IMG/VR virus record: IMGVR_UViG_3300032053_000002
Coordinates: 124,001 to 188,000 of that record
DNA length: 64,000 nucleotides
Strand: one strand, 5' to 3'
Under the pieces are notes generated by a model. The model had not been told where the DNA came from, did not search any database, and saw nothing but the letters and a program-made list of their open reading frames with translations. The number at the start of each line of letters is the position of its first letter. The stretch's first letter is position 1. Below, piece after piece: positions 1,173 through 20,039 of the stretch. The translations under genes were made by a program, and so were the position numbers.

Positions 1173-3425
1173 TTAATTCCTTTTAATCGTCGAGAACAAA
1201 GAATTCAACTCTTTAGCAAGCGGAACCAGTTGATCAACCCTGATGAAGCGACTATCCTTACCGTACATTTCGCGGAAAGTTACAGCGGAACTAGACGTGG
1301 TATCTACGCGATCACTTACGAAAAAGGACATAACCCGAATACCGTTTGCTCTCATTTTATCTACGGCTTCTTTTGTCAGAGTTTCAATATCCTTAATCCC
1401 ATTATAGCTGTTAGGTTCACCGTCGCTGATGTTGATGAAGTACGATACTTTTCCGACACTACTATTAAGTATTTCTTTCATCGTCGCCTCGAAACACAAT
1501 CCTTCGGGAGTACCACCAGTGGAACACATCATAGAGAAGTATTTACGAAACTTACCGAAACTGTCTTTGCGACTATCATACGCAAGCAGAACCGTCGGCG
1601 CTTGCATACCATTAGTAACGTAGTAATCCCACCGAAGAGAAATCATAACTTTTAAGTTATTCACCTGAGTAGCAGCGTAGGCTAAAGCCGACACCATAGT
1701 CATCGTCCTATTCCACTTATCACCCCCCATAGACGATGACGCGTCAATACTAATATGTAGCATCGCTTCACCGAAAGTGTCCTTAGTAACCTGTGAAAAG
1801 ACAGATTCCAAATCATATCCCAGTCCGTGAAGTAACCGTTTTTCCAGATGGCCGGTTTGTTTACGAATAAGTTTAGTAACCTTTGTCTCGTTACGAATCT
1901 GTAAGCGATTCGCCAACATCTTGCCTAACCGAATTCCGAGATTGACATACGTTTCAGACGGCTTACGATTGGAGTTATGAAATAAACTATCGCGCATCAA
2001 ATGCATCGACTCGTCGTTCAGTTCGCGAATGACAACTACTTGTACACCTTCTTTACTTTCACCATGACTGTCAGATTCAGTACCGGTAGCGCCATCACCA
2101 ACTTTAGTTTTTTTCCCACCAACGTTCTCAACCGTCGTACCGGACGCATCCATTGCGTTAATTATTTCGTGCTCGTCTTTAGTGATAGCACCTTTCTTTA
2201 CTTTTCCATTTACCAGTTCTTTTATTTCTTCAATAGCCTTTTTCAACTGTTTTTTCTGTTCTTTTGTCAGTTCATCTCCAGATTGTGGCGTTCCGTCTCC
2301 GACATTAACCATATCACCGTCTTGCAACTTATCTATTGGGTTATCGTGTTTCGAATCACCGTCATCTTTTTTATCACCGTCTTTGCTGTCGCCAGAGTCT
2401 TTGTCTTTTTTATCACTACCGTCAGAGTCTTTATCTTTTTTATCACTGTCGCCAGAACCGCCACCACTATCACCAGATTCTTCTCCACCATCACCGCTAT
2501 CGCCAGATTCTTTTTCATCACCACTATCTTTTGTCTGCGACTCATCACCGGTTTCCGTAGGTTTATTTAACGGATGGTCAACCGGAAGCGGGTCAATGTT
2601 TTCTAACACAACCGTAAAAATCTTTTCGGCGACTATACGAGAATCGGACGTACTTTCCAGGCGGTCGATATTGTCAATATCAAATATGTTACTGATTTTA
2701 TCTAAACCAGGAAGTGCATTCAGGTCAATGTTACTTTTATCAGACGCCAGACCGTAGAAGCGAAAATGATAACTTTCAAGATTTCTCTCGCGATAGTAAC
2801 TTGATTTCAATCCAAGAGCAACTATTTTCGCGTTCCAATATCTATTATACAACGATGTATAATATGGTCTATAACCGATAACTTTGTCCATCATAATACG
2901 GTCAATGCGACGATCTTCAATAAAGTTCCAGTAGTCAAAGAACAACTTTTCCAACTCTTCTTTATTGGTTATGTTTTTTGTAGCGGCTAAAGCCGTGATT
3001 GATGGGGTTACATTTATAGTTCCAGTTTTAAGAAACTCACTGTACAATATGTGACTGGACTCGTGGAGTGCTAACCCGACAACCGTATCAAAATCTTTGT
3101 TAGTAACGTTAGCACTAATAAAGACATTTTTACTGTCGGTCATACTATGATCTTGAACGTTAAACAATACTTTGATTTTTTTGTCGCGAGTCGCGATGTG
3201 GACAAACCTGGCGACCGCTCTGCGAATAGACGACATTTCGATAAGCGATTTCTTATCTTTTTCTTCTGGGATAGCACGTAGCCAGTAACGAGAATACAGA
3301 TTGGCGGTAGAGTAATCTTCATCTTCCCGAAAACCAAATCGCGTCTTGAAGAAATCTTTCGCCATTTCCTTATCGTATGCTTCGTCGGCTTTATTTTTGC
3401 CACCGAATAAGTTTTTTATACTCAA
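1173..3425 (-). CDS. vWA-domain protein with N-terminal HExxH metallopeptidase-like domain (CobT-like partner of MoxR ATPase)
   Basis: HESSH (aa121-125) followed by IEDRRID; D/G/S/K-rich linker; C-terminal MIDAS motifs IDASSSM, GGTPEG, ISDGEP. Confidence 0.85.
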   Translation of the reverse strand: MSIKNLFGGKNKADEAYDKEMAKDFFKTRFGFREDEDYSTANLYSRYWLRAIPEEKDKKSLIEMSSIRRAVARFVHIATRDKKIKVLFNVQDHSMTDSKNVFISANVTNKDFDTVVGLALHESSHILYSEFLKTGTINVTPSITALAATKNITNKEELEKLFFDYWNFIEDRRIDRIMMDKVIGYRPYYTSLYNRYWNAKIVALGLKSSYYRERNLESYHFRFYGLASDKSNIDLNALPGLDKISNIFDIDNIDRLESTSDSRIVAEKIFTVVLENIDPLPVDHPLNKPTETGDESQTKDSGDEKESGDSGDGGEESGDSGGGSGDSDKKDKDSDGSDKKDKDSGDSKDGDKKDDGDSKHDNPIDKLQDGDMVNVGDGTPQSGDELTKEQKKQLKKAIEEIKELVNGKVKKGAITKDEHEIINAMDASGTTVENVGGKKTKVGDGATGTESDSHGESKEGVQVVVIRELNDESMHLMRDSLFHNSNRKPSETYVNLGIRLGKMLANRLQIRNETKVTKLIRKQTGHLEKRLLHGLGYDLESVFSQVTKDTFGEAMLHISIDASSSMGGDKWNRTMTMVSALAYAATQVNNLKVMISLRWDYYVTNGMQAPTVLLAYDSRKDSFGKFRKYFSMMCSTGGTPEGLCFEATMKEILNSSVGKVSYFINISDGEPNSYNGIKDIETLTKEAVDKMRANGIRVMSFFVSDRVDTTSSSAVTFREMYGKDSRFIRVDQLVPLAKELNSLFSTIKRN

Positions 3426-3455: not shown

Positions 3456-3527
3456 AATATACCACCCCCCGGCGTATCAGTCAACTGTTATTTTAACTAT
3501 TTTTTTAACCATATGAATTATTTCACA
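3456..3527 (-). promoter_or_regulatory. Sigma70-type promoter P1 with UP element and palindromic box
   Basis: TTGACT (3484-3479)-17 bp-TATATT (3461-3456); box TATGAA-TTAT-TTCACA at 3512-3527. Confidence 0.8.
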
Positions 3528-3540
3528 TGACCGTTCCTGG

Positions 3541-3584
3541 AAAAAAAGAAATACCCCCTGCACATAATGTATAGGGGGTATTTC
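3541..3584 (-). terminator. Intrinsic terminator after the AAA+ ATPase gene
   Basis: GAAATACCCCCT / AGGGGGTATTTC 12-bp stem followed by T7 on the minus strand. Confidence 0.85.
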
Positions 3585-3603
3585 GCCTTCTTAGGGAAGG
3601 ATT

Positions 3604-4911
3604 TTACATTAAGTCATCTTGATGAAACAGGTCGCCAGATCCAGCCACGACCGGTTCAACTTCTTCTTTTTCCTTTTTCTCTTTTTTCGGCTCTTTGACT
3701 ACATCTTTTTCGAACAGCGGCTCGGCGTCGAGGTTACTATATTGCTGAATGAACTGCAACAGATGTGTTCTTTCGGAATCGGCACCACCTTCACCGGAAA
3801 ACATATTCACCACACTGGCTTCCATCACTTCACTGAAAGTAAACCCATCGTTCAACATGCTAACCTGCGCGACAGTGGAGCGGATAGAAATCATGGTAGT
3901 CAGGGTTGGCGCTTCACTGGTAGCCTCTTTACGAGTATACCCGGCAACAGCAACAATACCCTTAATAAGTTTCTGGTTAATTTCAGGATATAAAAGTTTT
4001 AACAACTTGAATTCTTCGGCTTCAGTAGGAATATCCATTTCAATCATGACCGGAAAACGGTCTTTCGTAGCACGATCAATGATACGAGTAGCGGTGTATT
4101 CACCACCGACGTTAGCGGTCGTAAAGAACGTTACTCCAGGAGCGACATTGATTACAGGTGTTTTCGGGTCTTCATCCAACCGCACATAACGCTGATCCGG
4201 ATCGAGAATCGTCATAAGGATATTTTCAGCATCAGGATTGGCACGAGTTATTTCGTCCAAGAGAATTACAGCACCCGGTGTCGTAATGGCTTTGATAAAC
4301 TCAGACTTGACGAAGTAAGTACCGGTTTCCTTATTGAAGTGTGTGTTACCGATTAAAGTAGCACGAGCGTCCTGTGTAGCCCCAAGATTAAACTTGAAGA
4401 ACGGGCGACCCAGAACTTTACCGATAGTGCGACCGGTAAGTGTTTTACCGAATCCACTATAACCCGTAAAGATGATATTCTGGCCACGAAGAGCAGAGTG
4501 CACCGCATACTTCCATTTCAGTTCAGCCAATATGAGGGTCTTCGGTTTCAGTGAGATTGCGTTCTTGATAGCAGTACGTACATCTTCATCAGATGGGGTT
4601 ACGTATCCTGTATATTCAGATGGAGTAGTCGCCTCGACTGTGGGGTTGGCGACAACCGAAGTAGGCATAAGTGTAGAACCGTTACTATATTCATAGTCAA
4701 CGGGAACTTCATCGGCTTTCAAACGACGCCAGAAAACATTACCGGCCTTCGATACCACTTTTCCTAAGTAGATACCGTGGTCAGCCGCATGGCGACGAGC
4801 GCCGTAAGGTATTGGTTCGCTATACATCTTCTCCGTCTTGATTTCAATCGGGTTCAGATGAGAACCATCGCGAACGACTTTAACGATTACTAAAAATTTT
4901 GGTGATTTCAT
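3604..4911 (-). CDS. MoxR/CbbQ/CobS-type AAA+ ATPase
   Basis: Walker A GYSGFGKT, Walker B LLDEITRA, LIG..HF pre-sensor insert, TANVG sensor I, DRF arginine finger; adjacent vWA gene. Confidence 0.9.
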   Translation of the reverse strand: MKSPKFLVIVKVVRDGSHLNPIEIKTEKMYSEPIPYGARRHAADHGIYLGKVVSKAGNVFWRRLKADEVPVDYEYSNGSTLMPTSVVANPTVEATTPSEYTGYVTPSDEDVRTAIKNAISLKPKTLILAELKWKYAVHSALRGQNIIFTGYSGFGKTLTGRTIGKVLGRPFFKFNLGATQDARATLIGNTHFNKETGTYFVKSEFIKAITTPGAVILLDEITRANPDAENILMTILDPDQRYVRLDEDPKTPVINVAPGVTFFTTANVGGEYTATRIIDRATKDRFPVMIEMDIPTEAEEFKLLKLLYPEINQKLIKGIVAVAGYTRKEATSEAPTLTTMISIRSTVAQVSMLNDGFTFSEVMEASVVNMFSGEGGADSERTHLLQFIQQYSNLDAEPLFEKDVVKEPKKEKKEKEEVEPVVAGSGDLFHQDDLM

Positions 4912-4944
4912 GTAACTTTATTCCTTCCCTAAATTGTATACTTA

Positions 4945-5016
4945 AATATACCAAATCCCGGCTTACTAGTCAACTGCTATTTTAACTATTTTTTCAGCCT
5001 TGTGAATTATTTCACT
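4945..5016 (-). promoter_or_regulatory. Sigma70-type promoter P2 with UP element and palindromic box
   Basis: TTGACT (4973-4968)-17-TATATT (4950-4945); TGTGAA-TTAT-TTCACT at 5001-5016. Confidence 0.8.
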
Positions 5017-5296
5017 TGACCTTTTTCTTAGCGAATTCTGAAAACGTATCACTCTTTCGAGCGACAGTCGCTACTTTCATTAACCGCTTACCGAACACCC
5101 GATCACAATCTTTGTCAGCAAGAGTTTTCTCTATTCTTTGCTGAACTTTCGCCACAAGCGCCGGGTGGATGTTAAAAGACGTAACCTTATATCCCCATTC
5201 CCGAACTTCAAACTTGAATATGCCCACCTTTTTAGGCATTCGTTTCAGTATCGTTAAAGTCAGACGATTATCCTGTTCCTTAAATATCGCTTTCAT
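5012..5296 (-). CDS. Hypothetical basic protein
   Basis: 94-aa ORF tightly tiled with its neighbours. Confidence 0.7.
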   Translation of the reverse strand: MKAIFKEQDNRLTLTILKRMPKKVGIFKFEVREWGYKVTSFNIHPALVAKVQQRIEKTLADKDCDRVFGKRLMKVATVARKSDTFSEFAKKKVK

Positions 5297-5503
5297 TTAT
5301 AGCGCTCCCATTCTTTTTAATTTGTTAATTGCGGTATGCAGTTCGTGGCAAAGATATTTATGCGCAACAAACTTTTCAACATCCTCTTCTTTTCGAGCAC
5401 GGTGAACTATCGTATAGCGTTTGGATTCCTTAACCCACCCAAATACCAGCCATTCGCGATGCCCCCTCAATGTCTTAAATAATCTTGGTCTTCCCGATTT
5501 CAT
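5297..5503 (-). CDS. Hypothetical protein
   Basis: 68-aa ORF, stop/start coupled with neighbours. Confidence 0.65.
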   Translation of the reverse strand: MKSGRPRLFKTLRGHREWLVFGWVKESKRYTIVHRARKEEDVEKFVAHKYLCHELHTAINKLKRMGAL

Positions 5504-5952
5504 TATACTTGTTCCTTGTTATATTTCATGTATATTTTATTTAATTTTGTCGCCACCTTTTCACCTATCGGAATCTTCTCATCGGATGAAATGGCTCTTA
5601 ATACGGTTAGTATCAACATGCACGACTCTACCTCGTCACGATCTTCCCCCACAGCAATTAACTGTAATTTTTTCAGCTTCTCATATAGTATCGTAAAATC
5701 TTTTAATTCCACGACTTTCGCTTTGTAAATGTATAAAATTTCGCCTCTTTTGTATTTATCTACTTTCGGCGTATTATTAGGATCAGAATGTCGTATATCA
5801 AATACCATACTAAAAGTACCGCTGGCATTCCCATACAAATCGACTGTGCCCGACCAGGGTTCGGCAGGTTCTATCAAAGAACCACCTAACCCCTGCTTCT
5901 CGTACCCGTCTTTTTTATCGAATTCTATTATCTTGTATACCATATCAATCAT
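5503..5952 (-). CDS. Hypothetical protein with the shared helical module
   Basis: LYEKLKKL...VATKLNKIYMKY at the C-terminus. Confidence 0.7.
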   Translation of the reverse strand: MIDMVYKIIEFDKKDGYEKQGLGGSLIEPAEPWSGTVDLYGNASGTFSMVFDIRHSDPNNTPKVDKYKRGEILYIYKAKVVELKDFTILYEKLKKLQLIAVGEDRDEVESCMLILTVLRAISSDEKIPIGEKVATKLNKIYMKYNKEQV

Positions 5953-6202
5953 TTATCAGTAAAAGTTTCATCCCATCGATGGAAACATATCTCCAGCCAT
6001 GCGTTTCTCCTTCACCATCTTTGTCGGCTCCAGAAAATATAAAGGTTCGTTTTTCTCCAGTACTCTCGTTCAACACAGTAACACAATTGTATAAGTGATG
6101 GTTTTTCACACGACCACTCAAATCACTCCATTCCCATGCCAGTGTCCGGGTTTTCTTATCCCACCCATTTTTCATCAGTTGGTTATTTACAGTGATTATC
6201 AT
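5945..6202 (-). CDS. Hypothetical protein
   Basis: 85-aa ORF overlapping the next gene by 8 bp. Confidence 0.7.
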   Translation of the reverse strand: MIITVNNQLMKNGWDKKTRTLAWEWSDLSGRVKNHHLYNCVTVLNESTGEKRTFIFSGADKDGEGETHGWRYVSIDGMKLLLIND

Positions 6203-6203
6203 A

Positions 6204-6344
6204 TTATTTGATCCTCTTTGATGTTAAAAAACTGTAGATGACGTACATAACTGCGGCGAATGCGAACAGCATCGGTTCCGTTATCAGTAAGTAAGTCAGT
6301 ATCGCGACAACAAATATCGTTTCAAATGTCGCCTTCAATATCAT
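6204..6344 (-). CDS. Small membrane protein (46 aa, not in ORF track)
   Basis: Manual translation MILKATFETIFVVAILTYLLITEPMLFAFAAVMYVIYSFLTSKRIK; first gene after promoter P3. Confidence 0.6.
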   Translation of the reverse strand: MILKATFETIFVVAILTYLLITEPMLFAFAAVMYVIYSFLTSKRIK

Positions 6345-6374
6345 TTTTTTATTCACTTTACTTTTCATATTCAT

Positions 6375-6445
6375 ATATTACATCTTTCCGAATTATCAGT
6401 CAAATTATATTTTAACTATTTTTATTCTTTGTGAAAAATTTCACT
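6375..6445 (-). promoter_or_regulatory. Sigma70-type promoter P3 with palindromic box
   Basis: TTGACT (6403-6398)-17-TAATAT (6380-6375); TGTGAA-AAAT-TTCACT at 6430-6445. Confidence 0.75.
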
Positions 6446-6469
6446 TTATTTGTGTCCTATTTTTTAATT

Positions 6470-6781
6470 TTAATGCCAGTTAGTCTGATATACGGAACTT
6501 CCACTCCATACGTACGCGCGTTCAAAAGAAGAGATCGATATAAACTCGCGACCATCTTTGGTAAGTTTTACCTTTTTCATTTTATTTTCCATACGAGCAT
6601 AGTCATTACCGGCATTTAGGTCAGGTATAACGTAGTCGCTTAAACCGGTTTCCCTCTTCACGATCTTCTGCCCCACTCCGACAACCTTCACAGACTTAGC
6701 GGTCACGGCAACCACTTTATAAAAGTTTACGTTGGTCTGTTCATAACCCCAGCAACTTACGAGAATGTCATTTACTTTCAT
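6470..6781 (-). CDS. Hypothetical phage protein (WGYEQTNVNFY motif)
   Basis: Start moved to ATG at 6781 behind AAGGG RBS; motif recalled from phage hypothetical proteins. Confidence 0.75.
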   Translation of the reverse strand: MKVNDILVSCWGYEQTNVNFYKVVAVTAKSVKVVGVGQKIVKRETGLSDYVIPDLNAGNDYARMENKMKKVKLTKDGREFISISSFERAYVWSGSSVYQTNWH

Positions 6782-6783
6782 TA

Positions 6784-6981
6784 TTATTTCCCTTTTAGTT
6801 TTAGTGTCAACATAAATGGATACAACCGCGTCAACCACTTTTCTACTTCTTCCAAAAGTGTTTCGTCAGAAACCGTTGATTTTGTCCGTGGTCTTAGCCA
6901 AGCTGCGAGTTCTTTTTTTATTTCGTCGAATGGACGAGTAGTGTCAATCGTAAACGGTGCGTCATTTTTTGATTTACTCAT
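6784..6981 (-). CDS. Hypothetical protein
   Basis: 65-aa ORF in the operon. Confidence 0.65.
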   Translation of the reverse strand: MSKSKNDAPFTIDTTRPFDEIKKELAAWLRPRTKSTVSDETLLEEVEKWLTRLYPFMLTLKLKGK

Positions 6982-7076
6982 TTTATTTATGTCCTATTTT
7001 TTTACTTACCAGTGAATGTATCGTATAGCACATCGCCAGATTCGCGGCGACAACTACTAAAACAACGACTACCATT

Positions 7077-7442
7077 TTAATTAGTCCTCGACTTGGATGC
7101 ACGTAACCAGTCAGTATTGACTACTACCGGAACGACATCAGTGATCTTACCATTAGCAACTTTCGCTAACTGACCAATATATTTTTTGATTCTACGTTTG
7201 ATGATGGCGAACTGCTTGTCAGTGATAAACCCAAACCGTGAATAGAAGTTACCGATGCTGGTAAATATCTCACCATCGACACCAGTGAACCCCACTCCAT
7301 TATCTTCGGTCGTACCAACGAATGATTTTTCGCCACGAGTCTGAAGAGAATAGATTCTCAGGAAACCCTTGAATATGGCGTAGTCATTGTCTATCAGCAT
7401 ATTCGCTATATCTTCTTTATTATACTTTGGTTTTGTTTTCAT
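7077..7442 (-). CDS. Hypothetical phage protein (IY..QT..E...NGVGF..D motif)
   Basis: 121-aa ORF directly after promoter P4. Confidence 0.75.
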   Translation of the reverse strand: MKTKPKYNKEDIANMLIDNDYAIFKGFLRIYSLQTRGEKSFVGTTEDNGVGFTGVDGEIFTSIGNFYSRFGFITDKQFAIIKRRIKKYIGQLAKVANGKITDVVPVVVNTDWLRASKSRTN

Positions 7443-7450
7443 AATAGTAT

Positions 7451-7634
7451 AATATACAATTCCTCAGTATAACAGTCAAATTATTTTTTAACTATTCTTA
7501 CAGAGTGTGAAATTATTCACAAGATCGTCGCCGTGACTGGCGACTTGCCATCCCGAGCCTTGTGAAGTTTTTCACAAAGTAGCGGCTCAGCTTGACGCGA
7601 GCAAGCGGCCGGCCGCGTTGTGAAATTTTTCACA
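7451..7634 (-). promoter_or_regulatory. Sigma70-type promoter P4 with three palindromic boxes
   Basis: TTGACT (7479-7474)-17-TATATT (7456-7451); boxes at 7506-7521, 7561-7576, 7619-7634 (last two are perfect TTGTGAA-N4-TTCACAA). Confidence 0.85.
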
Positions 7635-7644
7635 AGCGACTGTA

Positions 7645-8000
7645 ATAAAAAAGTCCTACGTCCGTGACTTCCATGTAGCCTCGGGTTGCGATCCCGTTCG
7701 TCATGGCCTCGTCACGTAATTCGTAGGACTTTTCTCACCTAAGTCGTTTCCGACTGTCCACATTACCTGCTAGCCGGCGGGATAGTTGGATGGGCGACGA
7801 CTCCCATCATCTCATACCGACACATACGGCCGGTGCGCCTTTCTTCCTTAGACCACAACTATTTTCGGTGATTCTCGCGATTTCTGCCGAATTCGCGATA
7901 CTTTTATTCATTTCTCAAAGAACAAAAGAGTGCCCCGTAGGACACCCCCGAACGTTCTCCCGGGGAGTGTCCTCCACGCGGGTATACGTTCCATATTTGA
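7645..8000 (-). ncRNA. Candidate ~350-nt structured RNA (may encode a 34-aa peptide)
   Basis: Lies between promoter P5 and an 85-nt hairpin plus U-tract; hairpins at 7939-7973, 7789-7808, 7742-7755 (GAAA loop) and 7649-7733. Confidence 0.5.
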
Positions 8001-8006
8001 TATACT

Positions 8007-8035
8007 AATATACAACTTCTTGGCGAGAAAGTCAA
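8007..8035 (-). promoter_or_regulatory. Sigma70-type promoter P5
   Basis: TTGACT (8035-8030)-17-TATATT (8012-8007) with the same UP element TAGTTAAAATAACAG. Confidence 0.8.
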
Positions 8036-8043
8036 CTGTTATT

Positions 8044-8223
8044 TTAACTAAATGGGGAATCTCGATCTTCTAACTCGTCGAGCGTACGCTTGAAATCTTC
8101 GAGCGTCTCAATATATTTCAACTTCAGCTGCTTGTTTTCTTTAAGCAATCGCTCCACTTCCTTCTTCAACTCGGAGATGGTTTTCAGCATCTCGATCTTA
8201 TTCTTTAGTTCAGCGGTAGTCAT
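8044..8223 (-). CDS. Small coiled-coil protein (59 aa, not in ORF track)
   Basis: Manual translation MTTAELKNKIEMLKTISELKKEVERLLKENKQLKLKYIETLEDFKRTLDELEDRDSPFS. Confidence 0.65.
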   Translation of the reverse strand: MTTAELKNKIEMLKTISELKKEVERLLKENKQLKLKYIETLEDFKRTLDELEDRDSPFS

Positions 8224-8249
8224 ATCTTATCCTTATTTTTAAGTCTTAG

Positions 8250-8474
8250 TTATAGAACAAAAAAAACCGCTCGGTTCTTTCCAACCTTTTCATACGTCAA
8301 CACCCTTGAAGGGCGGAAATCGCTCAAATAACCGGCGAGTTCATCCAAAGAATCGAAATACTTCGGCGAAAAAAACTTATCAGGATCGGGGTCTTTTTCC
8401 AATACCCATCGCTTGTTGAGCATTTTGCGCCGATTTTTGACCTTGTTGGCGAAATAATGGTCGGTGGTTTTCAT
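8250..8474 (-). CDS. Hypothetical protein
   Basis: 74-aa ORF, AAGGAA RBS. Confidence 0.65.
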   Translation of the reverse strand: MKTTDHYFANKVKNRRKMLNKRWVLEKDPDPDKFFSPKYFDSLDELAGYLSDFRPSRVLTYEKVGKNRAVFFVL

Positions 8475-8504
8475 ATATTGTTTCCTTTTTTTATATTTTA
8501 ATCT

Positions 8505-8580
8505 TGGGGTGCACGGTGAGATTCGAACTCACGCTCCGCGGGTCACAGCCGCGTAATGCTACCGCTACATCACGCGCACC
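8505..8580 (-). tRNA. tRNA-His (GUG)
   Basis: Cloverleaf: G-1, acceptor GTGCGCG/CGTGCAC, anticodon arm CGCGG-CT GTG AC-CCGCG, TTCGAAT loop, C73 and encoded CCA. Confidence 0.95.
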
Positions 8581-8587
8581 ATATATT

Positions 8588-8770
8588 TTATCCTGAGAAA
8601 GCTTTTTCCAATGTTATTCGTTGCAACACTTCCCAGTATAACTTCGGCATTGCCTTCTTATCGATCATTTCCGATATATTCCGAGCCGATCCGAATTCGT
8701 CTTCAAAAGCCTGTTCGGACTTCTCAATGTACTTTTTTACTTCTTTTAAAAACGTCATGTTACTCTTCAC
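8588..8770 (-). CDS. Hypothetical protein
   Basis: GTG start at 8770 behind AAGGAG, downstream of promoter P6; the track start at 8809 overlaps the promoter. Confidence 0.65.
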   Translation of the reverse strand: MKSNMTFLKEVKKYIEKSEQAFEDEFGSARNISEMIDKKAMPKLYWEVLQRITLEKAFSG

Positions 8771-8799
8771 GGCGAAACTCTCCTTAATTTTTATACTAT

Positions 8800-8828
8800 A
8801 ATATAACACCTATCAGCTTACCAGTCAA
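8800..8828 (-). promoter_or_regulatory. Sigma70-type promoter P6
   Basis: TTGACT (8828-8823)-17-TATATT (8805-8800). Confidence 0.8.
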
Positions 8829-8837
8829 CTGCTATTT

Positions 8838-9275
8838 TTACTTATTTTTTGCGTATGCATTTAGTGCCCATCTCCACATTTCGTTTAAAAACCCAACGTC
8901 TTTTATACTGAGTTTGCGGGTTTTTAAAAATTCTTTATAAAATAACGTTATTTCCGTTGCTGATTCGGTACACCCGACATTCTTTAAACTACTAATTAAA
9001 AGCTCAATTTTTTCGCTGATTCTTTTTATTTTCTCTTCGGGCGACTCTACTCTTTCTAGTACGAAAAATGGAAAATTATATCCGCTATCAAGATGAATTC
9101 CTTTACTTCCGCTACAAATAAACGTTATGTCGCCCTCTTCACCGACATATTTGTCCATCATAGAAGTCCAAGTATTATCCCATCCATTTTCATGATTATG
9201 AGCAATCATTACAACTTTTACTCTGTCGCCAACTTTGAATCCGGCAGCTTTTTGTTTGATTTCGTATTCACTCAT
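8838..9275 (-). CDS. Hypothetical protein, SH3/KOW-like N-terminus plus helical module; paralog of 9272-9706
   Basis: FKVGDRVKV...W.NTW...M.K.VG; EKIKRISEKIELLISSL...LSIKDVGFLN. Confidence 0.8.
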   Translation of the reverse strand: MSEYEIKQKAAGFKVGDRVKVVMIAHNHENGWDNTWTSMMDKYVGEEGDITFICSGSKGIHLDSGYNFPFFVLERVESPEEKIKRISEKIELLISSLKNVGCTESATEITLFYKEFLKTRKLSIKDVGFLNEMWRWALNAYAKNK

Positions 9276-9706
9276 TTTTTAATATACGCTTTCCATATTG
9301 CATTTAAATACTCAACATCGTCTATACTGAATTTATGACTTTTTTTAAATCGCGCGTACATTTTATACACTTCGTTAGCAACACGTTTGCATCCGTTATT
9401 CTGTAAACCACTAATTAAACGCTCAAACTTTTCACTTACTCTCTTTATTTTCTCATCGGACGACTTCACTTTTTTCAGTACGGAAGGTGGGAATCTGTAT
9501 GTCGGGCCTTTACGGGGAATACTTTCTAAACGAATTCCTGCGGTCTTATGAATATCGGATATAACCATTATTTTGCCAACACTTTTATTCATCTCAAGTA
9601 CCCATGTATTCCGCCACTCACTCGTGTAGCTCTCAGCAATACCGGTAACTTTTACTTTGTCGCCGATTTTGAACTGGGTGGGGGTTCTCTTTTTTCCTGG
9701 CGACAT
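9272..9706 (-). CDS. Hypothetical protein, tandem paralog of 8838-9275
   Basis: FKIGDKVKV...WRNTW..EMNKSVG; EKIKRVSEKFERLISGL...FSIDDVEYLN. Confidence 0.8.
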   Translation of the reverse strand: MSPGKKRTPTQFKIGDKVKVTGIAESYTSEWRNTWVLEMNKSVGKIMVISDIHKTAGIRLESIPRKGPTYRFPPSVLKKVKSSDEKIKRVSEKFERLISGLQNNGCKRVANEVYKMYARFKKSHKFSIDDVEYLNAIWKAYIKK

Positions 9707-9708
9707 CT

Positions 9709-10263
9709 CTACACACTCTCCAAATATGCGTGATTTAACCCGCCTTTTTTATTACTGTATATAGACACTTCTGCATCAAGTTCACTGGGAGTATTACTTA
9801 CCCAACCGAAGAACTTCTTTCTACAATCACTGTGACGACAGAAGTCAACTTGCGGACCGTCAACCGGTTTACCACAGTAGTGGCAATACCTTTCTTCACG
9901 AAACATTTCTGTTTTCGGAAGTAAACGTTTCCATAGGGAAATATCCTTCCGCTTATACGTTTTCTTCACCACTGCGGGACTTCCAAATATAACTTCACCA
10001 TGCAACTTAGCGAGATAAGGTCTTATCCATTTTACCGAGTATTCCACCACGGCGACTCGCTTATAAGTGTATTTATAATCGAACAACTTATCCATAGCGT
10101 CTTGCTGTTTTCTAATCAACTCCAGCATACCTGAATCATCTTTCACAGTAACGGTAATCCCCAGCTCACTATTCTTGAAAACTAGGAAGGTACGCCCGAC
10201 TTTATACGCAAAAGATACTTTCGCGTCTCCGTATGTCTCGTAAAACTTTTTTTCGTTCATCAT
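9709..10263 (-). CDS. Hypothetical protein with C-terminal zinc finger
   Basis: CHYC...CRHSDC; first gene after promoter P7. Confidence 0.7.
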   Translation of the reverse strand: MMNEKKFYETYGDAKVSFAYKVGRTFLVFKNSELGITVTVKDDSGMLELIRKQQDAMDKLFDYKYTYKRVAVVEYSVKWIRPYLAKLHGEVIFGSPAVVKKTYKRKDISLWKRLLPKTEMFREERYCHYCGKPVDGPQVDFCRHSDCRKKFFGWVSNTPSELDAEVSIYSNKKGGLNHAYLESV

Positions 10264-10285
10264 TATTCTTTTCTCCTATACCTAA

Positions 10286-10388
10286 AATATACCACTTCTC
10301 AGCGTATCAGTCAAGAACTATTTTCGCTATAGCGGCATTCCGGACGGCAATGCGGTCGTAACTAGAGCCCTTCGTGAACTTTTTCACA
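10286..10388 (-). promoter_or_regulatory. Sigma70-type promoter P7 with palindromic box
   Basis: TTGACT (10314-10309)-17-TATATT (10291-10286); CGTGAA-CTTT-TTCACA at 10373-10388. Confidence 0.75.
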
Positions 10389-10421
10389 TACGGTCTGTAC
10401 GTTTTCTGTAAGTGGTTTTTC

Positions 10422-10493
10422 AATCCGCTCGCTCCTCTCGGTTGCAATCCGCTCGCTCCTCTCGGTTGTCAATTCGCTCGCTCCTCTCGGTTG
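10422..10493. repeat. Three tandem copies of a 23-bp core AAT(C/T)CGCTCGCTCCTCTCGGTTG
   Basis: Copies at 10422, 10446 and 10471 (periods 24 and 25 bp), no spacers. Confidence 0.9.
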
Positions 10494-10586
10494 TAGGGGG
10501 CAACTCGGTAGACGTGTCAGGCGAGTTCAGAACCGTGCATGCAAATAGGCAGCCTGAAGTGTGTTCGTCGTGTGGGGGGGTTCTTG

Positions 10587-10658
10587 GCGGGAGTTTGTGG
10601 TTTGTGCGGGAGTTCTTGCGAGAGTTTGCGCGGGAGTTCTTGCGGGAGTTTGCGCGAG
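10587..10658. repeat. G-rich GCGGGAGTT repeats (24-bp unit x2 plus partials)
   Basis: GCGGGAGTTCTTGCG(A/G)GAGTTTGC at 10606-10629 and 10630-10653. Confidence 0.85.
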
Positions 10659-10833
10659 GAATCGTGGAGAAGTGGGGGCATGGGGGTGGCGGTGCTTCCG
10701 ACGAGTAGCAATTGCGCATCGGCAATACCTGCGACCCACTATTATAATATTATCCGAATATCAAAAAGGCGTGGATTATTTATTTATAATAGGGAAGTGA
10801 TTATCAATTCCAGCAAGTTGTATCAAATAGGCG

Positions 10834-10913
10834 AGTGATATGCAGCGATATGCAGTGATATGCAGCGATATGCAGTGATATGCAGTGATATGCAGTGATA
10901 TGCAGCGATATGC
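10834..10913. repeat. 10-bp tandem repeat TGCAG(C/T)GATA, 7 full copies plus partial flanks
   Basis: Full copies 10841-10910 read directly. Confidence 0.95.
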
Positions 10914-10929
10914 GCTGTAATATATATGG

Positions 10930-11688
10930 CTAATAACGTTGTATAAAAGCGAGTTCCGATTTAAGATTAGAAAGAAAGAAATGTTCATCAGTAGTTCTAT
11001 CGAATACTATTGTAGCATCGTGTATAGTAGGTTGATCATAAATTAGTTTCGGATCTATATTATTTTTAGAATAGTCGCCGATTAGTTGTTTGGCCAGAAC
11101 ATTTAATGTTTGTAAATCATCTTTTTTTAAAGATGGTCGCAGTAACAAATGGTCTACAAATATAAATCGTAATCTTGCCTGAAAGCGTTCTTCTGATATT
11201 AAATACTCAAATATTCTCTCATATTTCGAAGTATCATTTTCCCATAATGCATAGGATTCGCGAAGAATATGTCTCAATTTGTTTAATATCGTATAGTATT
11301 TATTTATGTAATATTTTTCGCCGAGGTGATTCGTATGATATTTACTTCTCCAGAATTCAAGCCGGGTTGAAACACTAACATCTTTACTAAGAAGGCTTTG
11401 CAGATGATTAATAGAAAAAAATGTTTCACTTTGATTGAGTAACTTGCGAACTTCATTAAAATCATAGCTTTCGCCTTCTTGCGAAGTTTGGGCAGATTTA
11501 TTTAGACACTTAGATACGATTTGGTGCTCTATTATTTTATAGTGCGAAAAATCTTTATCATACATTAAAACACCGCCGATTGGCAGCGCTTCTGCATAAA
11601 ACACATAAGAGCGAATATGTATTTTGTTGTCTTTATAAAAAGATTTTAAGTTGATAGCGTGAACAGGTACTATATTTGTATTAGACAT
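10930..11688 (-). CDS. Hypothetical protein, paralog of 14192-14893
   Basis: VPVHAINLK / LPVHVINLR; YYTILNKLRHIL / YFRILNKLKYLY. Confidence 0.75.
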   Translation of the reverse strand: MSNTNIVPVHAINLKSFYKDNKIHIRSYVFYAEALPIGGVLMYDKDFSHYKIIEHQIVSKCLNKSAQTSQEGESYDFNEVRKLLNQSETFFSINHLQSLLSKDVSVSTRLEFWRSKYHTNHLGEKYYINKYYTILNKLRHILRESYALWENDTSKYERIFEYLISEERFQARLRFIFVDHLLLRPSLKKDDLQTLNVLAKQLIGDYSKNNIDPKLIYDQPTIHDATIVFDRTTDEHFFLSNLKSELAFIQRY

Positions 11689-11694
11689 AACTAT

Positions 11695-11943
11695 TTATTT
11701 CGCCAACCAGGCCCAATATTTTGGAGTTCCGTAAGCACCTATTGACAAACCGTTGCACCATATGGTGCAACGGTTACCGTTGTACCATTGTAAAGGATTT
11801 AGTTCGTCTTTCCATGGCGAAAATGATACGGCTCTATTGTGGTTGAACCATACCAGAATAGCACTATTATAATCAACCGTATTAACGTCTGGCGGGTCGC
11901 CTTCAATCCACTCCAAATCAAGCGGTGATTTTGTTATTTTCAT
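11695..11943 (-). CDS. Hypothetical Trp-rich protein
   Basis: 82-aa ORF in the tiled operon. Confidence 0.65.
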   Translation of the reverse strand: MKITKSPLDLEWIEGDPPDVNTVDYNSAILVWFNHNRAVSFSPWKDELNPLQWYNGNRCTIWCNGLSIGAYGTPKYWAWLAK

Positions 11944-11952
11944 AAGTCGTTC

Positions 11953-12309
11953 CTATTTTTCTTTTATTGTAAACGTGCTGTCAGTAGGTTGAGTAATGAT
12001 GTAGTGATTGTCCCCTATTACTACTGGGATTTCGCGTGGTTTGGATCTAAATTGATTACTTTTCAATATACGAGAAATTTCCATTAACTTGCGCCTTGGT
12101 TCATCATACTTTCGGAATATTATAAACTTTTCTTTTTGAAAGTTGATTTCGTCGATAACCGCAAACAACGAATCACCAATCTCTTTTGAAAAACTATTTT
12201 TTTCGGAGAGTATCTTAAAAATAACCGTCAACTCTTCGGTTGGTTCTATATCACAACCGAGCGACATTAAAAATATAGAACATAATAATAATAACATTAA
12301 ATTTTTCAT
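11953..12309 (-). CDS. Putative lipoprotein
   Basis: MKNLMLLLLCSIFLMSLGC signal peptide with lipobox-like SLGC. Confidence 0.6.
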   Translation of the reverse strand: MKNLMLLLLCSIFLMSLGCDIEPTEELTVIFKILSEKNSFSKEIGDSLFAVIDEINFQKEKFIIFRKYDEPRRKLMEISRILKSNQFRSKPREIPVVIGDNHYIITQPTDSTFTIKEK

Positions 12310-19961: not shown

Positions 19962-19990
19962 AATATACAACTATTTAAAGTAACAGTCAA
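19962..19990 (-). promoter_or_regulatory. Sigma70-type promoter P10 (for the tRNA-like RNA)
   Basis: TTGACT (19990-19985)-17-TATATT (19967-19962). Confidence 0.75.
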
Positions 19991-20039
19991 GTGGTATTTT
20001 GATTATTTTTTTGAAATGGTATACGAATGTACACCAGTG

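What the first reader, a model, noticed from the sequence alone, without database searches (positions are those of the whole stretch)
3456..10388. Seven TGTGAA-N4-TTCACA boxes (Rex-type, also CRP-like) tied to a battery of near-identical early promoters
Seen: seven promoters TTGACT-17-TA(T/A)(A/T)(T/A)T, mostly with the UP element AAAATAGTTAAAATARCAG, within 7 kb. Seven palindromes lie at 3512, 5001, 6430, 7506, 7561, 7619 and 10373. All have A at position 6 and T at position 11, and two are perfect TTGTGAA-N4-TTCACAA. Four are centred 34.5-35.5 bp upstream of the first base of the -35 hexamer (about -70), and one at about -101. Known: TTGTGAA-N4-TTCACAA is the operator consensus of the NADH/NAD+-sensing repressor Rex. 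TGTGA-N6-TCACA is the CRP site, and about -70 is a class I CRP activation position. Inference: early transcription may be gated by host redox or cAMP state, the boxes may titrate host Rex to derepress fermentative metabolism, or a phage factor may use them. Oxygen-sensitive B12-radical SAM genes in the same window fit an anaerobic host.
Basis: partly seen in the sequence, partly recalled or inferred. Interest (0 to 1): 0.8.

Follow-up and report, generated by a model that had tools for sequence, protein, structure and literature searches.

The report
Rex-type operator boxes at phage promoters
A 293-kb T4-like phage from anoxic sediment carries about ten copies of a palindrome matching the binding site of the bacterial redox sensor Rex, each at a fixed distance upstream of one subclass of its early promoters, so part of its early gene expression may be tied to the host's metabolic state, though the protein that binds is not identified.

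Summary
All seven boxes and seven promoters are at the stated coordinates. Genome-wide (292,723 bp) there are 11 boxes with at most one mismatch, against about one expected. Eight lie 15-70 bp upstream of a TTGAC(T/A)-17-TATATT promoter (P about 1e-15). Box centres sit 24.5/25.5, 34.5/35.5 or 66.5 bp upstream of the -35 hexamer, all on one face of the helix and just outside the UP element.

The boxed promoters form a distinct subclass with a G+C-rich spacer. A second palindrome, GGTG-N10-CACC, occupies the same slot at three other promoters.

The half-site (T)TGTGAA, with A at position 6 in 21 of 22 half-sites, fits the generalized Rex operator better than the E. coli CRP site. The position fits class I activation better than Rex-style occlusion. 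The phage encodes no detectable Rex or CRP/FNR homologue. It does encode NAD+ salvage enzymes, PAS sensors and a hybrid histidine kinase.

The host is unknown and no relative shares the system, so the binding protein stays inferred: host Rex about 0.35, a phage-encoded or other factor about 0.3, a host CRP/FNR-type activator about 0.2. This is a new variant of a known kind, namely host regulator sites on phage promoters.

The parts
3512..3527 (.). Box 1 copy (TATGAATTATTTCACA on +; 1 mismatch). Its centre is 35.5 bp upstream of the -35 hexamer of the promoter at 3456-3484.
5001..5016 (.). Box 1 copy (1 mismatch). Its centre is 35.5 bp upstream of the -35 hexamer of the promoter at 4945-4973.
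6430..6445 (.). Box 1 copy (1 mismatch). Its centre is 34.5 bp upstream of the -35 hexamer of the promoter at 6375-6403.
7506..7521 (.). Box 1 copy (exact 16-mer). Its centre is 34.5 bp upstream of the -35 hexamer of the promoter at 7451-7479. It is the first of three tandem boxes.
7561..7576 (.). Box 1 copy (perfect 18-mer TTGTGAA-N4-TTCACAA), 55 bp upstream of the box at 7506. Its centre is 89.5 bp from the -35 hexamer.
7619..7634 (.). Box 1 copy (perfect 18-mer), 58 bp further upstream. Its centre is 147.5 bp from the -35 hexamer, off the common helical phase. It lies just past the terminator-like end of the putative ncRNA.
10373..10388 (.). Box 1 copy (1 mismatch). Its centre is 66.5 bp upstream of the -35 hexamer of the promoter at 10286-10314 (about -101), three helical turns from the common slot.
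3456..3504 (-). Class B sigma-70-type promoter: UP-like AAAAATAGTTAAAATAACAG, TTGACT, 17-bp G+C-rich spacer, TATATT. It drives a 750-aa ORF (1173-3425). I read that ORF's C-terminus as vWA-like; this was not tested.
4945..4993 (-). Class B promoter with UP element. It drives an AAA_5 (MoxR/CobS-like) ATPase at 3604-4911. It is 84% identical over 104 bp to the 3456 promoter region.
6375..6423 (-). Class B promoter (-10 TAATAT) with UP element. An ATG lies 6 nt after the -10 hexamer, so the mRNA is predicted to be leaderless. It drives a run of small ORFs (6204-6374 and onward to 5012).
7451..7499 (-). Class B promoter with UP element, preceded by three boxes. It drives a 121-aa ORF at 7077-7442 (phrog_21015, unknown function).
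8007..8055 (-). Class B promoter with UP element but without a box. It drives the putative structured RNA.
8800..8848 (-). Class B promoter with UP-like element but without a box. It drives a 73-aa ORF, tRNA-His (8505-8579) and small ORFs.
10286..10334 (-). Class B promoter with a weaker UP element. Its box sits at about -101. It drives a 184-aa zinc-ribbon ORF and two paralogous ORFs of about 145 aa.
20018..20035 (.). Box 2 copy (GGTGTACATTCGTATACC on the minus strand), a different 18-bp palindrome. It is centred about 35 bp upstream of the -35 hexamer of the promoter at 19962-19990, the same slot as box 1.

Best explanation
The boxes are operators for a dimeric, sequence-specific DNA-binding protein. 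This protein controls a distinct subclass (class B) of the phage's sigma-70-type early promoters. It acts from one face of the helix, immediately upstream of the UP element (box centres at about -60, -70 and -101).

The most likely binder is the host's NADH/NAD+-sensing regulator Rex. Rex bound in its NAD+ form beside the UP element would modulate initiation that depends on the RNA polymerase alpha C-terminal domain (alphaCTD), rather than occlude the core promoter. About eight early operons would then respond to host redox state. These include an AAA_5 ATPase, the 750-aa ORF downstream of it, and many small ORFs of unknown function.

Shown: the boxes exist, they are non-random, they associate with one promoter subclass at fixed and phased distances, the motif matches the Rex consensus, and no Rex or CRP homologue was detected in the phage. 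Inferred: that any protein binds, that it is Rex, the direction of the effect, and the redox coupling.

I put the general claim (a protein operator controlling this promoter subclass) at about 0.85. The confidence given in this field is for the Rex identification.
For: Non-randomness and association:
- Searches give 11 sites against about 1 expected, and 8 of 11 in the 0.75% of the genome that lies 15-70 bp upstream of -35 hexamers (P = 1.6e-15).

Sequence conservation rather than structure conservation:
- The 22 half-sites read T18 G21 T22 G22 A22 A21 (out of 22), with T preceding in 14 of 22 and an A/T-rich centre.
- That is the generalized Rex consensus TTGTGAANNNNTTCACAA (PMC5317091, citing Ravcheev 2012) and the S. 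aureus TTGTGAAW4TTCACAA (PMC2883068).
- Three copies are perfect 18-mers.
- The near-invariant A6/T11 is part of the Rex half-site. From my own knowledge, it is not part of the E. coli CRP consensus TGTGAT..ATCACA.

Density:
- The phage has 6 matches to the 18-mer (at most 1 mismatch) in 0.29 Mb.
- Sixteen bacterial genomes of 2.4-5.2 Mb have 0-3 each, no more than the reversed-pattern control.

No phage-encoded candidate:
- No Put_DNA-bind_N (the Rex N-terminal domain), HTH_Crp_2 or cNMP_binding domain was found in the 91%-complete genome.

Setting:
- The source is sediment metagenomes.
- The phage carries B12-radical-SAM enzymes.
- Rex homologues occur in sediment lineages sampled here.
- The phage encodes NAD+ salvage and synthesis enzymes (NAPRTase, an isochorismatase-like protein, NAD synthase) partly downstream of a boxed promoter. 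It therefore changes the very pool that Rex reads.

Strain variation:
- A variant in another sample has 6 substitutions and 1 insertion across 7445-7667, none inside the three boxes. This is weak evidence: chance alone gives about 0.23.
Against: - Position. None of the ten promoter-linked boxes overlaps or abuts a core promoter. All end at least 16 bp upstream of the -35 hexamer, and no weaker box overlaps a core promoter. Mapped Rex sites lie within the promoter or a few bp from it, and Rex acts by occlusion (PMC2883068).
- Phasing. The fixed, helically phased positions are the signature of class I activators, and Rex is not known as one.
- Second palindrome. An unrelated palindrome (box 2) occupies the same slot at three promoters. 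This fits a phage-specific design with its own factors as well as it fits host factors.
- Host unknown. Conflicting hints came from PncB (Ignavibacteriae/Bacteroidota, whose promoters look different) and from the histidine kinase (Thermodesulfobacteriota/Acidobacteriota). Only 13 of 81 sampled genomes in one candidate class have Rex.
- No comparative support. No relative with the same system exists in the collections searched.
- Shared half-site. From my own knowledge, TTGTGA-type half-sites are used by several helix-turn-helix families (CRP, LacI, Rex), so the match is less diagnostic than its length suggests.
Confidence: 0.35

Rival explanations
1. A phage-encoded regulator, or another factor not recognisable by sequence, binds box 1, and a second such factor binds box 2. 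The slot at about -70 would be a phage-specific operator position used to switch promoter subclasses on or off during the infection programme.
For: - Two unrelated palindromes sit in exactly the same slot (box 1 about 10 times, box 2 three times).
- Palindromes in general are enriched 30-40 bp upstream of -35 hexamers: 16 promoter-bins against about 2 expected.
- Box 1 is restricted to a promoter subclass with its own conserved spacer.
- Eight of the 11 boxes are packed into an 11-kb module of ORFs with unknown function and higher G+C content.
- Relatives lack both the promoters and the boxes.
- Most early ORFs have no annotation, so an unrecognised DNA-binding protein is easy to hide.
- The phage has one HTH_3 protein (genome 65060-65347).
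Against: - No DNA-binding domain was found in any ORF of the module by Pfam, PHROGs or the Atlas.
- The single HTH_3 gene is 60 kb away and has no box near it.
- An arbitrary phage operator matching all 14 specified positions of a widespread host regulator's consensus would be a coincidence.
Confidence: 0.3
2. A host CRP/FNR-family activator binds the boxes and activates class B promoters by the class I mechanism. It would contact the RNA polymerase alpha C-terminal domain (alphaCTD) positioned on the adjacent UP element, tying these operons to cAMP or another effector.
For: - The core is TGTGA-N6-TCACA.
- Box centres fall at about -59.5/-60.5, -69.5/-70.5 and -101.5 if the transcription start is 7 nt past the -10 hexamer. 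These are in phase within about 0.15 turn and close to the class I positions -61.5, -71.5 and so on, which I cite from my own knowledge.
- An A/T-rich UP element lies directly between the box and the -35 hexamer.
- There is a precedent in T4-like cyanophages, which carry 1-16 sites per genome for NtcA (PMC3037559), which to my knowledge is a CRP-family regulator.
Against: - A at position 6 and T at position 11 are nearly invariant (21 of 22). From my own knowledge, the E. coli CRP consensus has the opposite bases there with little information.
- The promoters already have near-consensus -35 and -10 hexamers plus a UP element, so they should need little activation.
- No CRP/FNR homologue is present in the phage, and the host is unknown.
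Confidence: 0.2
3. The palindromes act as RNA hairpins at the 3' ends of upstream transcripts, for example as processing or stabilising signals or as terminators, rather than as protein operators on DNA.
For: - Each box can fold into a hairpin of -4 to -14.7 kcal/mol.
- Some copies have extra flanking complementarity (7561, 7619).
- Each box lies between the end of one operon and the next promoter.
Against: - The sequence is conserved, not the pairing. There is no compensatory variation among 22 half-sites.
- No U tract follows on either strand.
- The stems are short and A/U-rich.
- The distance is fixed relative to the downstream -35 hexamer, not to the upstream stop codon.
- A separate canonical terminator precedes the box at 3512.
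Confidence: 0.05

Closest known systems
Rex operators (ROP sites) of Gram-positive and anaerobic bacteria
   Same: Both are 18-bp palindromes of the form TTGTGAA-N4-TTCACAA with an A/T-rich centre (PMC2883068, PMC5317091). The phage has three perfect copies and a half-site profile that follows the consensus.
   Different: Bacterial sites lie within or next to the core promoter and repress by occlusion. The phage sites all lie upstream of the UP element at phased positions. No Rex protein is assigned here. The density, 6-11 sites in 0.29 Mb, is far above that of the bacterial genomes sampled.
Class I CRP-dependent promoters (E. coli lac type)
   Same: Both have a TGTGA-N6-TCACA core, a site centred near -60 or -70 on one helix face, and an A/T-rich segment that binds the RNA polymerase alpha C-terminal domain between the site and the -35 hexamer.
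   Different: Positions 6 and 11 are nearly invariant A/T here. The core promoters are near-consensus. The phage encodes no CRP, and no CRP is known for the unidentified host.
NtcA (and Pho-box) promoters of T4-like cyanophages
   Same: A T4-like phage carries multiple binding sites for a host global metabolic regulator in front of phage genes (1-16 NtcA sites per genome; PMC3037559).
   Different: The motif and the regulator family differ. To my knowledge, NtcA sites act at about -41.5 in place of a -35 element. Here the box is added upstream of a complete strong promoter and is confined to one promoter subclass.
Early promoters of T4-like phages
   Same: Both have dozens of sigma-70-type promoters on one strand, with A-rich UP-like elements, in front of small novel ORFs and tRNA genes (PMC1524935).
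   Different: That survey of five T4-like genomes contains no mention of a palindrome, inverted repeat or CRP site. This phage also splits its promoters into two spacer classes.

Membership tests
Rex operator (ROP) | 18-bp inverted repeat TTGTGAA-N4-TTCACAA | tested here: met
   There are 3 perfect copies, 6 with at most 1 mismatch and 10 box copies with at most 2 mismatches (12 matches genome-wide, two of them background; the box at 3512 has 3). Half-site counts out of 22 are T18 G21 T22 G22 A22 A21, with a preceding T in 14. The consensus is from PMC5317091 and PMC2883068.
Rex operator (ROP) | A/T-rich 4-bp centre (W4, S. aureus type) | tested here: met
   Seven of 11 centres are purely A/T. 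The other four have one to three G/C.
Rex operator (ROP) | Site within or adjacent to the core promoter, so that the bound repressor excludes RNA polymerase | tested here: not met
   All promoter-linked boxes end 16-27 bp or more upstream of the -35 hexamer. No weaker box overlaps a core promoter. The criterion is from PMC2883068.
Rex operator (ROP) | A Rex protein present in the cell | tested here: inconclusive
   No Rex N-terminal domain was found in the phage. The host is unknown. Rex occurs in 13 of 81 genomes of one candidate class and in one candidate Thermodesulfobacteriota MAG.
Rex operator (ROP) | Binding strengthened by NAD+ and relieved by NADH | not testable with these tools
   This needs a gel-shift assay or in vitro transcription.
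Class I CRP/FNR-family activator site | TGTGA-N6-TCACA-type palindrome | tested here: met
Class I CRP/FNR-family activator site | Centre near -61.5, -71.5, -82.5 or -92.5 on one helix face | tested here: inconclusive
   Centres lie 24.5/25.5, 34.5/35.5 and 66.5 bp upstream of the -35 hexamer. That is about -60, -70 and -101, in phase within 0.15 turn. Transcription starts are predicted, not mapped, so absolute positions are uncertain by 1-2 bp. The boxes at 89.5 and 147.5 are 0.24 and 0.76 turn off phase.
Class I CRP/FNR-family activator site | A CRP/FNR-family protein available | tested here: inconclusive
   The phage has none. The host is unknown.
T4-like early promoter | Sigma-70-type -35 and -10 hexamers with an A-rich upstream element, many copies, co-oriented with genes, in a T4-like genome | tested here: met
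   Forty TTGAC(A/T)-17-TAnnnT sites lie almost all on the coding strand. The genome has a T4 portal, a family B DNA polymerase (44% identical to the polymerase of Microcystis phage Mel-JY01; about 29-32% to gp43 of T4-like phages) and a fused Mre11/Rad50-like protein. Timing was not tested.

The most novel reading that the evidence does not exclude
A virulent T4-like jumbo phage of an anaerobe reads the host NADH/NAD+ ratio through host Rex bound at a non-canonical upstream, alphaCTD-proximal position. Its own NAD+ synthesis genes (pncB, nadE) would shift that ratio during infection. Rex occupancy would then act as a built-in timer or metabolic gate for one class of early promoters. A second host regulator (box 2, which has the same geometry as the Geobacter LexA motif) would gate another set from the same slot.
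Probability: 0.12. Interest if true: 0.8.

Novelty: new variant of a known kind. Interest (0 to 1): 0.55.

Why it matters
Lytic phages are usually thought to run their early programme regardless of host physiology. The few known exceptions, NtcA and Pho boxes in cyanophages, changed how infection in nutrient-limited oceans is understood.

A redox-sensor operator at fixed positions on a subclass of early promoters would extend that idea. Here the phage comes from anoxic sediment and also carries NAD+ synthesis genes, PAS sensors and a histidine kinase. Phage development would then be gated by host energy state in anaerobes.

The regular architecture of operator, UP element and core promoter, with two interchangeable operator types, is also a clean natural system. 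It could be used to study how a regulator placed just upstream of a UP element affects RNA polymerase.

If the binder turns out to be a phage protein, the result is a more ordinary phage regulatory circuit.

Tried and rejected
Comparative genomics found nothing:
- There is no near DNA match in 50,697 phage records.
- An exact scan for box-N26/27-TTGACT found nothing in IMG/VR. In 241 million metagenome records it found only the window's own contig (Ga0315284_10000017) plus unrelated chance hits.
- A UP-plus-(-35) pattern gave only single chance hits.
- Relatives found through the AAA ATPase (about 50% amino-acid identity), and Microcystis phage Mel-JY01, have 0-1 boxes and no TTGACW-17-TATATT promoters.
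- The DNA polymerase query found no IMG/VR relatives by peptide patterns.

Host identification failed:
- The genome-contig scan with a DegT aminotransferase gave nothing useful.
- PncB points to Ignavibacteriae/Bacteroidota (57-62% identity, same pncB-isochorismatase gene order). Those genomes, however, show TAnnTTTG-type -7 elements rather than the phage's TTGACT/TATATT.
- The hybrid histidine kinase points weakly (about 42% identity) to Thermodesulfobacteriota and Acidobacteriota.

Box 2 as a host LexA site:
- Box 2 has the geometry of the G. sulfurreducens LexA motif GGTT-N10-AACC (PMC8565304).
- GGTGNAC-N4-GTNCACC is not enriched in 301 genomes of that phylum: 22 genomes had a match, with a comparable number of hits to the reversed-pattern control. 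This lead was left as a lead.

A phage-encoded binder was not found:
- Pfam, PHROGs and the Atlas, run on the module's ORFs, found no DNA-binding domain.
- HTH_17 is absent.
- There is one HTH_3 protein far from any box.
- The only response-regulator receiver domains lack DNA-binding outputs.

Other checks:
- Strain variation from other sediment runs was too sparse to test conservation.
- The two repeat-rich regions flanking the module are not homologous to each other.
- Ravcheev et al. 2012 (PMC3294762) is not held, so it is cited only through PMC5317091.

Full report
**What the window is.** The window is bases 124001-188000 of a 292,723-bp linear virus record (91% complete by CheckV). The same contig appears in a JGI sediment metagenome as Ga0315284_10000017, and near-identical DNA is present in several sediment metagenome runs. 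About 90% of genes lie on the minus strand. The phage is T4-like. It has a T4-type portal interrupted by inteins, a family B DNA polymerase, a fused Mre11/Rad50-like protein and a ribonucleotide reductase carrying a TSCPD domain. The nearest cultured relative is Microcystis phage Mel-JY01, at 44% amino-acid identity in the polymerase. No near DNA match exists among 50,697 phage records.

**Checking the observation.** The exact 16-mer TGTGAA-N4-TTCACA occurs at 7506, 7561 and 7619, where none is expected in shuffles. One-mismatch copies lie at 3512, 5001, 6430 and 10373. The promoter pattern TTGACT-17-TA(W)3T occurs eight times in the window, all on the minus strand, against 0.29 expected. Seven of these lie between 3456 and 10314. 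In the whole genome there are 5 exact boxes (0 expected), 11 with at most one mismatch (about 1 expected) and 19 with at most two (about 16 expected). There are therefore about ten real sites and no tail of weaker ones. Relaxing the 18-mer to three mismatches adds only background hits, none near a promoter.

**Association with promoters.** The genome has 40 matches to TTGAC(A/T)-17-TAnnnT, nearly all on the coding strand in front of ORFs or tRNA genes. Eight of the 11 boxes lie 15-70 bp upstream of one of these -35 hexamers. That zone is 0.75% of the genome (P = 1.6e-15). Two more boxes (7561, 7619) are stacked further upstream of the same promoter as 7506. Only one box (genome 123918) is not at a promoter. 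It sits in a G+C-rich, repeat-rich non-coding stretch at the edge of the module.

**Geometry.** The distance from box centre to the first base of the -35 hexamer takes few values:
- 34.5 or 35.5 bp at five promoters.
- 24.5 or 25.5 bp at two promoters outside the window (genome 54903 and 118423).
- 66.5 bp at the promoter at 10286.

Relative to 34.5 bp, these are -0.95, -0.86, 0, +0.1 and +3.05 helical turns, so all are on one face. The sequence between box and UP element differs from copy to copy while the box and the UP element are kept. This argues for selection on the elements rather than simple copying of a cassette. However, the promoters at 3456 and 4945 are 84% identical over 104 bp.

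**A promoter subclass.** The boxed promoters are not typical of the genome. Ten promoters (class B) share a G+C-rich spacer with consensus G.TA.GCCG.GAAGT.G and the UP-like AAAAATAGTTAAAATA. Eight of the ten carry box 1. The other 28 TATATT promoters (class A) have a T-rich spacer, and none carries box 1. Seven class B promoters lie in an 11-kb stretch (genome 123.5-134.9 kb, window about -500 to 10930). This stretch has 39-41% G+C against 31-37% elsewhere in the window. It is bounded on both sides by unusual tandem-repeat-rich non-coding DNA. The genes driven are an AAA_5 (MoxR/CobS-like) ATPase, a 750-aa protein downstream of it, a HAD-family domain protein, and many small ORFs without recognisable domains.

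**A second operator in the same slot.** While listing upstream regions I found a second 18-bp palindrome, GGTG(A/T)ACA(C/T)T(C/T)GTA(C/T)ACC, that is GGTG-N10-CACC. It occurs exactly three times in the genome, one copy at window 20018-20035. Each copy is centred 34-36 bp upstream of a -35 hexamer. Palindromes of any sequence are enriched 30-40 bp upstream of -35 hexamers: 16 promoter-bins against about 2 expected, half of them from boxes 1 and 2. The position of about -70 therefore looks like a designated operator slot in this phage.

**What binds: the motif.** The 22 half-sites read T18 G21 T22 G22 A22 A21, preceded by T in 14, with an A/T-rich centre. This is the generalized Rex consensus TTGTGAANNNNTTCACAA (PMC5317091, citing Ravcheev et al. 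2012) and the S. aureus TTGTGAAW4TTCACAA (PMC2883068). In the T. maritima Rex-DNA structure, the contacted bases are the two guanines and the following adenine of the half-site, plus the two leading thymines in the minor groove (PMC8836258). The core also satisfies TGTGA-N6-TCACA. However, the near-invariant A6/T11 is not a feature of the E. coli CRP consensus, as far as I know. On motif alone, Rex is the better match.

**What binds: the position.** Mapped Rex sites lie within or a few bp from the core promoter and act by excluding RNA polymerase (PMC2883068). Here no box touches a core promoter. The phased positions near -60, -70 and -101, with an A/T-rich UP element between box and -35 hexamer, are what class I activators use. 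On position alone, a CRP/FNR-type activator is the better match. So is any protein that works through the RNA polymerase alpha C-terminal domain (alphaCTD).

**What binds: the phage's own genes.** The phage has no detectable Rex N-terminal domain, HTH_Crp_2 or cNMP-binding domain. It has one HTH_3 protein (genome 65060-65347), far from any box. No DNA-binding domain was found in the module's ORFs by Pfam, PHROGs or the Atlas. Most early ORFs are unannotatable, so a phage factor cannot be excluded.

**Context that bears on a redox reading.** The phage encodes nicotinate phosphoribosyltransferase, an isochorismatase-like protein, NAD synthase and an IMPDH/GMP-reductase-like enzyme. These lie downstream of a class B promoter carrying a perfect box (genome 46290), with a class A promoter in between. 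It also encodes a protein with three PAS domains, a hybrid histidine kinase (PAS-HisKA-HATPase-REC) and a stand-alone receiver protein. In addition it has two B12-radical-SAM enzymes. This is a phage that invests in NAD+ supply and in sensing. That is compatible with the Rex reading but does not prove it.

**Host.** I could not identify the host.
- PncB's best named relatives are Ignavibacteriae and Bacteroidota MAGs (57-62% identity), with the same pncB-isochorismatase gene order. Promoter regions in those genomes show TAnnTTTG-type elements rather than TTGACT/TATATT.
- The histidine kinase's best named relatives (about 42% identity) are Thermodesulfobacteriota and Acidobacteriota.
- The Rex N-terminal domain is present in 13 of 81 genomes of the class around the Ignavibacteriae MAG, and in the Thermodesulfobacteriota MAG examined.
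- The 18-mer Rex consensus with at most one mismatch occurs 0-3 times in each of 16 bacterial genomes, no more than the reversed control. The phage has six in 0.29 Mb.
- Box 2 has the geometry of the G. sulfurreducens LexA motif GGTT-N10-AACC (PMC8565304). A scan of 301 genomes of that phylum showed no enrichment.

**Comparative evidence.** None is available. The box-promoter architecture was found nowhere else in IMG/VR or in 241 million metagenome records apart from the window's own contig. The nearest relatives have neither the promoters nor the boxes. One strain variant in another sediment run has six substitutions and one insertion across 7445-7667, none inside the three boxes. Chance alone would give this about one time in four.

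**Rival: RNA hairpins.** The boxes can fold (-4 to -14.7 kcal/mol). Four points argue against an RNA role:
- The sequence, not the pairing, is conserved.
- No U tract follows on either strand.
- The distance is fixed to the downstream promoter, not to the upstream stop codon.
- A canonical terminator already precedes the box at 3512.

**Verdict.** The boxes are almost certainly operators for a dimeric DNA-binding protein that controls one subclass of early promoters from a fixed upstream position. I put host Rex at about 0.35, a phage-encoded or otherwise unrecognised factor at about 0.3, a host CRP/FNR-type class I activator at about 0.2, and an RNA-level role at about 0.05. The rest is unassigned. 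Host regulator sites on T4-like phage promoters are known (NtcA in cyanophages; PMC3037559). A Rex-type box at a class-I-like position, paired with a second operator type in the same slot, has not been described in what I could read. I therefore rate this a new variant of a known kind, of moderate to good interest.

Noticed in passing
window 20018-20035; also genome 34959-34976 and 216535-216552: A second 18-bp palindrome, GGTG(A/T)ACA(C/T)T(C/T)GTA(C/T)ACC, occurs exactly three times in the genome. Each copy is centred 34-36 bp upstream of a sigma-70-type -35 hexamer, the same slot as the Rex-type box. Its geometry (GGTG-N10-CACC) resembles the Geobacter LexA motif GGTT-N10-AACC, but it is not enriched in 301 genomes of that phylum.
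   Followed up: partly
window 7645-8000 (minus strand): A putative RNA of about 355 nt has its own class B promoter (8007-8035) and a terminator-like end. No ORF of 60 aa or more lies on its strand; a 43-aa TTG-initiated frame overlaps its 5' end. It folds much better than shuffles (z = -4.4). Positions 7782-7856 give a sub-threshold match to the skipping-rope RNA family (RF02924; 21.6 bits against a gathering score of 36.7; E = 0.011). The three tandem boxes start right after it.
   Followed up: partly
genome-wide; in the window at 6375-6403, 7451-7479 and 19962-19990: Twelve of 40 sigma-70-type promoters have an ATG that opens a real ORF only 5-8 nt after the -10 hexamer, most often exactly 5 nt. 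About 30% of early transcripts are therefore predicted to be leaderless. This is unusual for a T4-like phage and may be a clue to the host.
   Followed up: partly
window 10400-10930 and genome 123300-124100 (just left of the window): Two non-homologous, repeat-rich, G+C-rich non-coding regions bracket the 11-kb promoter module. The first holds a 10-bp tandem repeat GCATATC(A/G)CT (about 8 copies), AACTCCCGC-type repeats and three copies of CCGAGAGGAGCGAGCG(A/G)ATTG. The second holds GGAGCGGAGCT repeats and a 46-bp unit repeated three times, plus one orphan Rex-type box. Their function is unknown. GC skew is locally reversed at 10001-12000.
   Followed up: partly
genome 36756-41561 (L256): The phage encodes an NAD+ salvage and synthesis set: NAPRTase (PncB), an isochorismatase-like protein directly downstream of it, NAD synthase (NadE) and an IMPDH/GMP-reductase-like enzyme. 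PncB is 57-62% identical to Ignavibacteriae and Bacteroidota proteins, and the pncB-isochorismatase gene order is the same.
   Followed up: partly
genome 68758-69936, 111493-112995 and 104295-104612: The phage encodes signalling proteins: one with three PAS domains, a hybrid histidine kinase (PAS-HisKA-HATPase-REC) and a stand-alone receiver-domain protein. No DNA-binding output domain was found.
   Followed up: partly
genome 63331-65347, with non-coding stretches at 66288-67433: A Ro60/TROVE protein with its vWA domain sits next to the only HTH_3 protein of the phage. Nearby ORF-poor stretches could hold a Y-RNA-like partner, but Rfam at gathering thresholds found only tRNAs there.
   Followed up: partly
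window 8505-8579; genome 57337-58107; genome 47-107 kb: A tRNA-His gene lies in the module, and a Thg1-family tRNA-His guanylyltransferase is encoded elsewhere in the phage. Thirty-six tRNA genes lie between 47 and 107 kb, many directly followed by early promoters.
   Followed up: no
window 21704-62134: A large sugar or glycan modification region includes a carbamoyltransferase, two DegT-family aminotransferases, two B12-binding radical SAM enzymes, methyltransferases and glycosyltransferases.
   Followed up: no
genome 1-7400: The left end of the record has very few ORFs of 60 aa or more. There are non-coding gaps of 0.4-1.5 kb at about 40% G+C, unlike the rest of the genome, which is about 90% coding.
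   Followed up: no
genome 260826-264848: The T4-type portal gene is 1340 aa long and carries intein splicing, HINT and HNH-like segments. It appears to be interrupted by one or two inteins.
   Followed up: no
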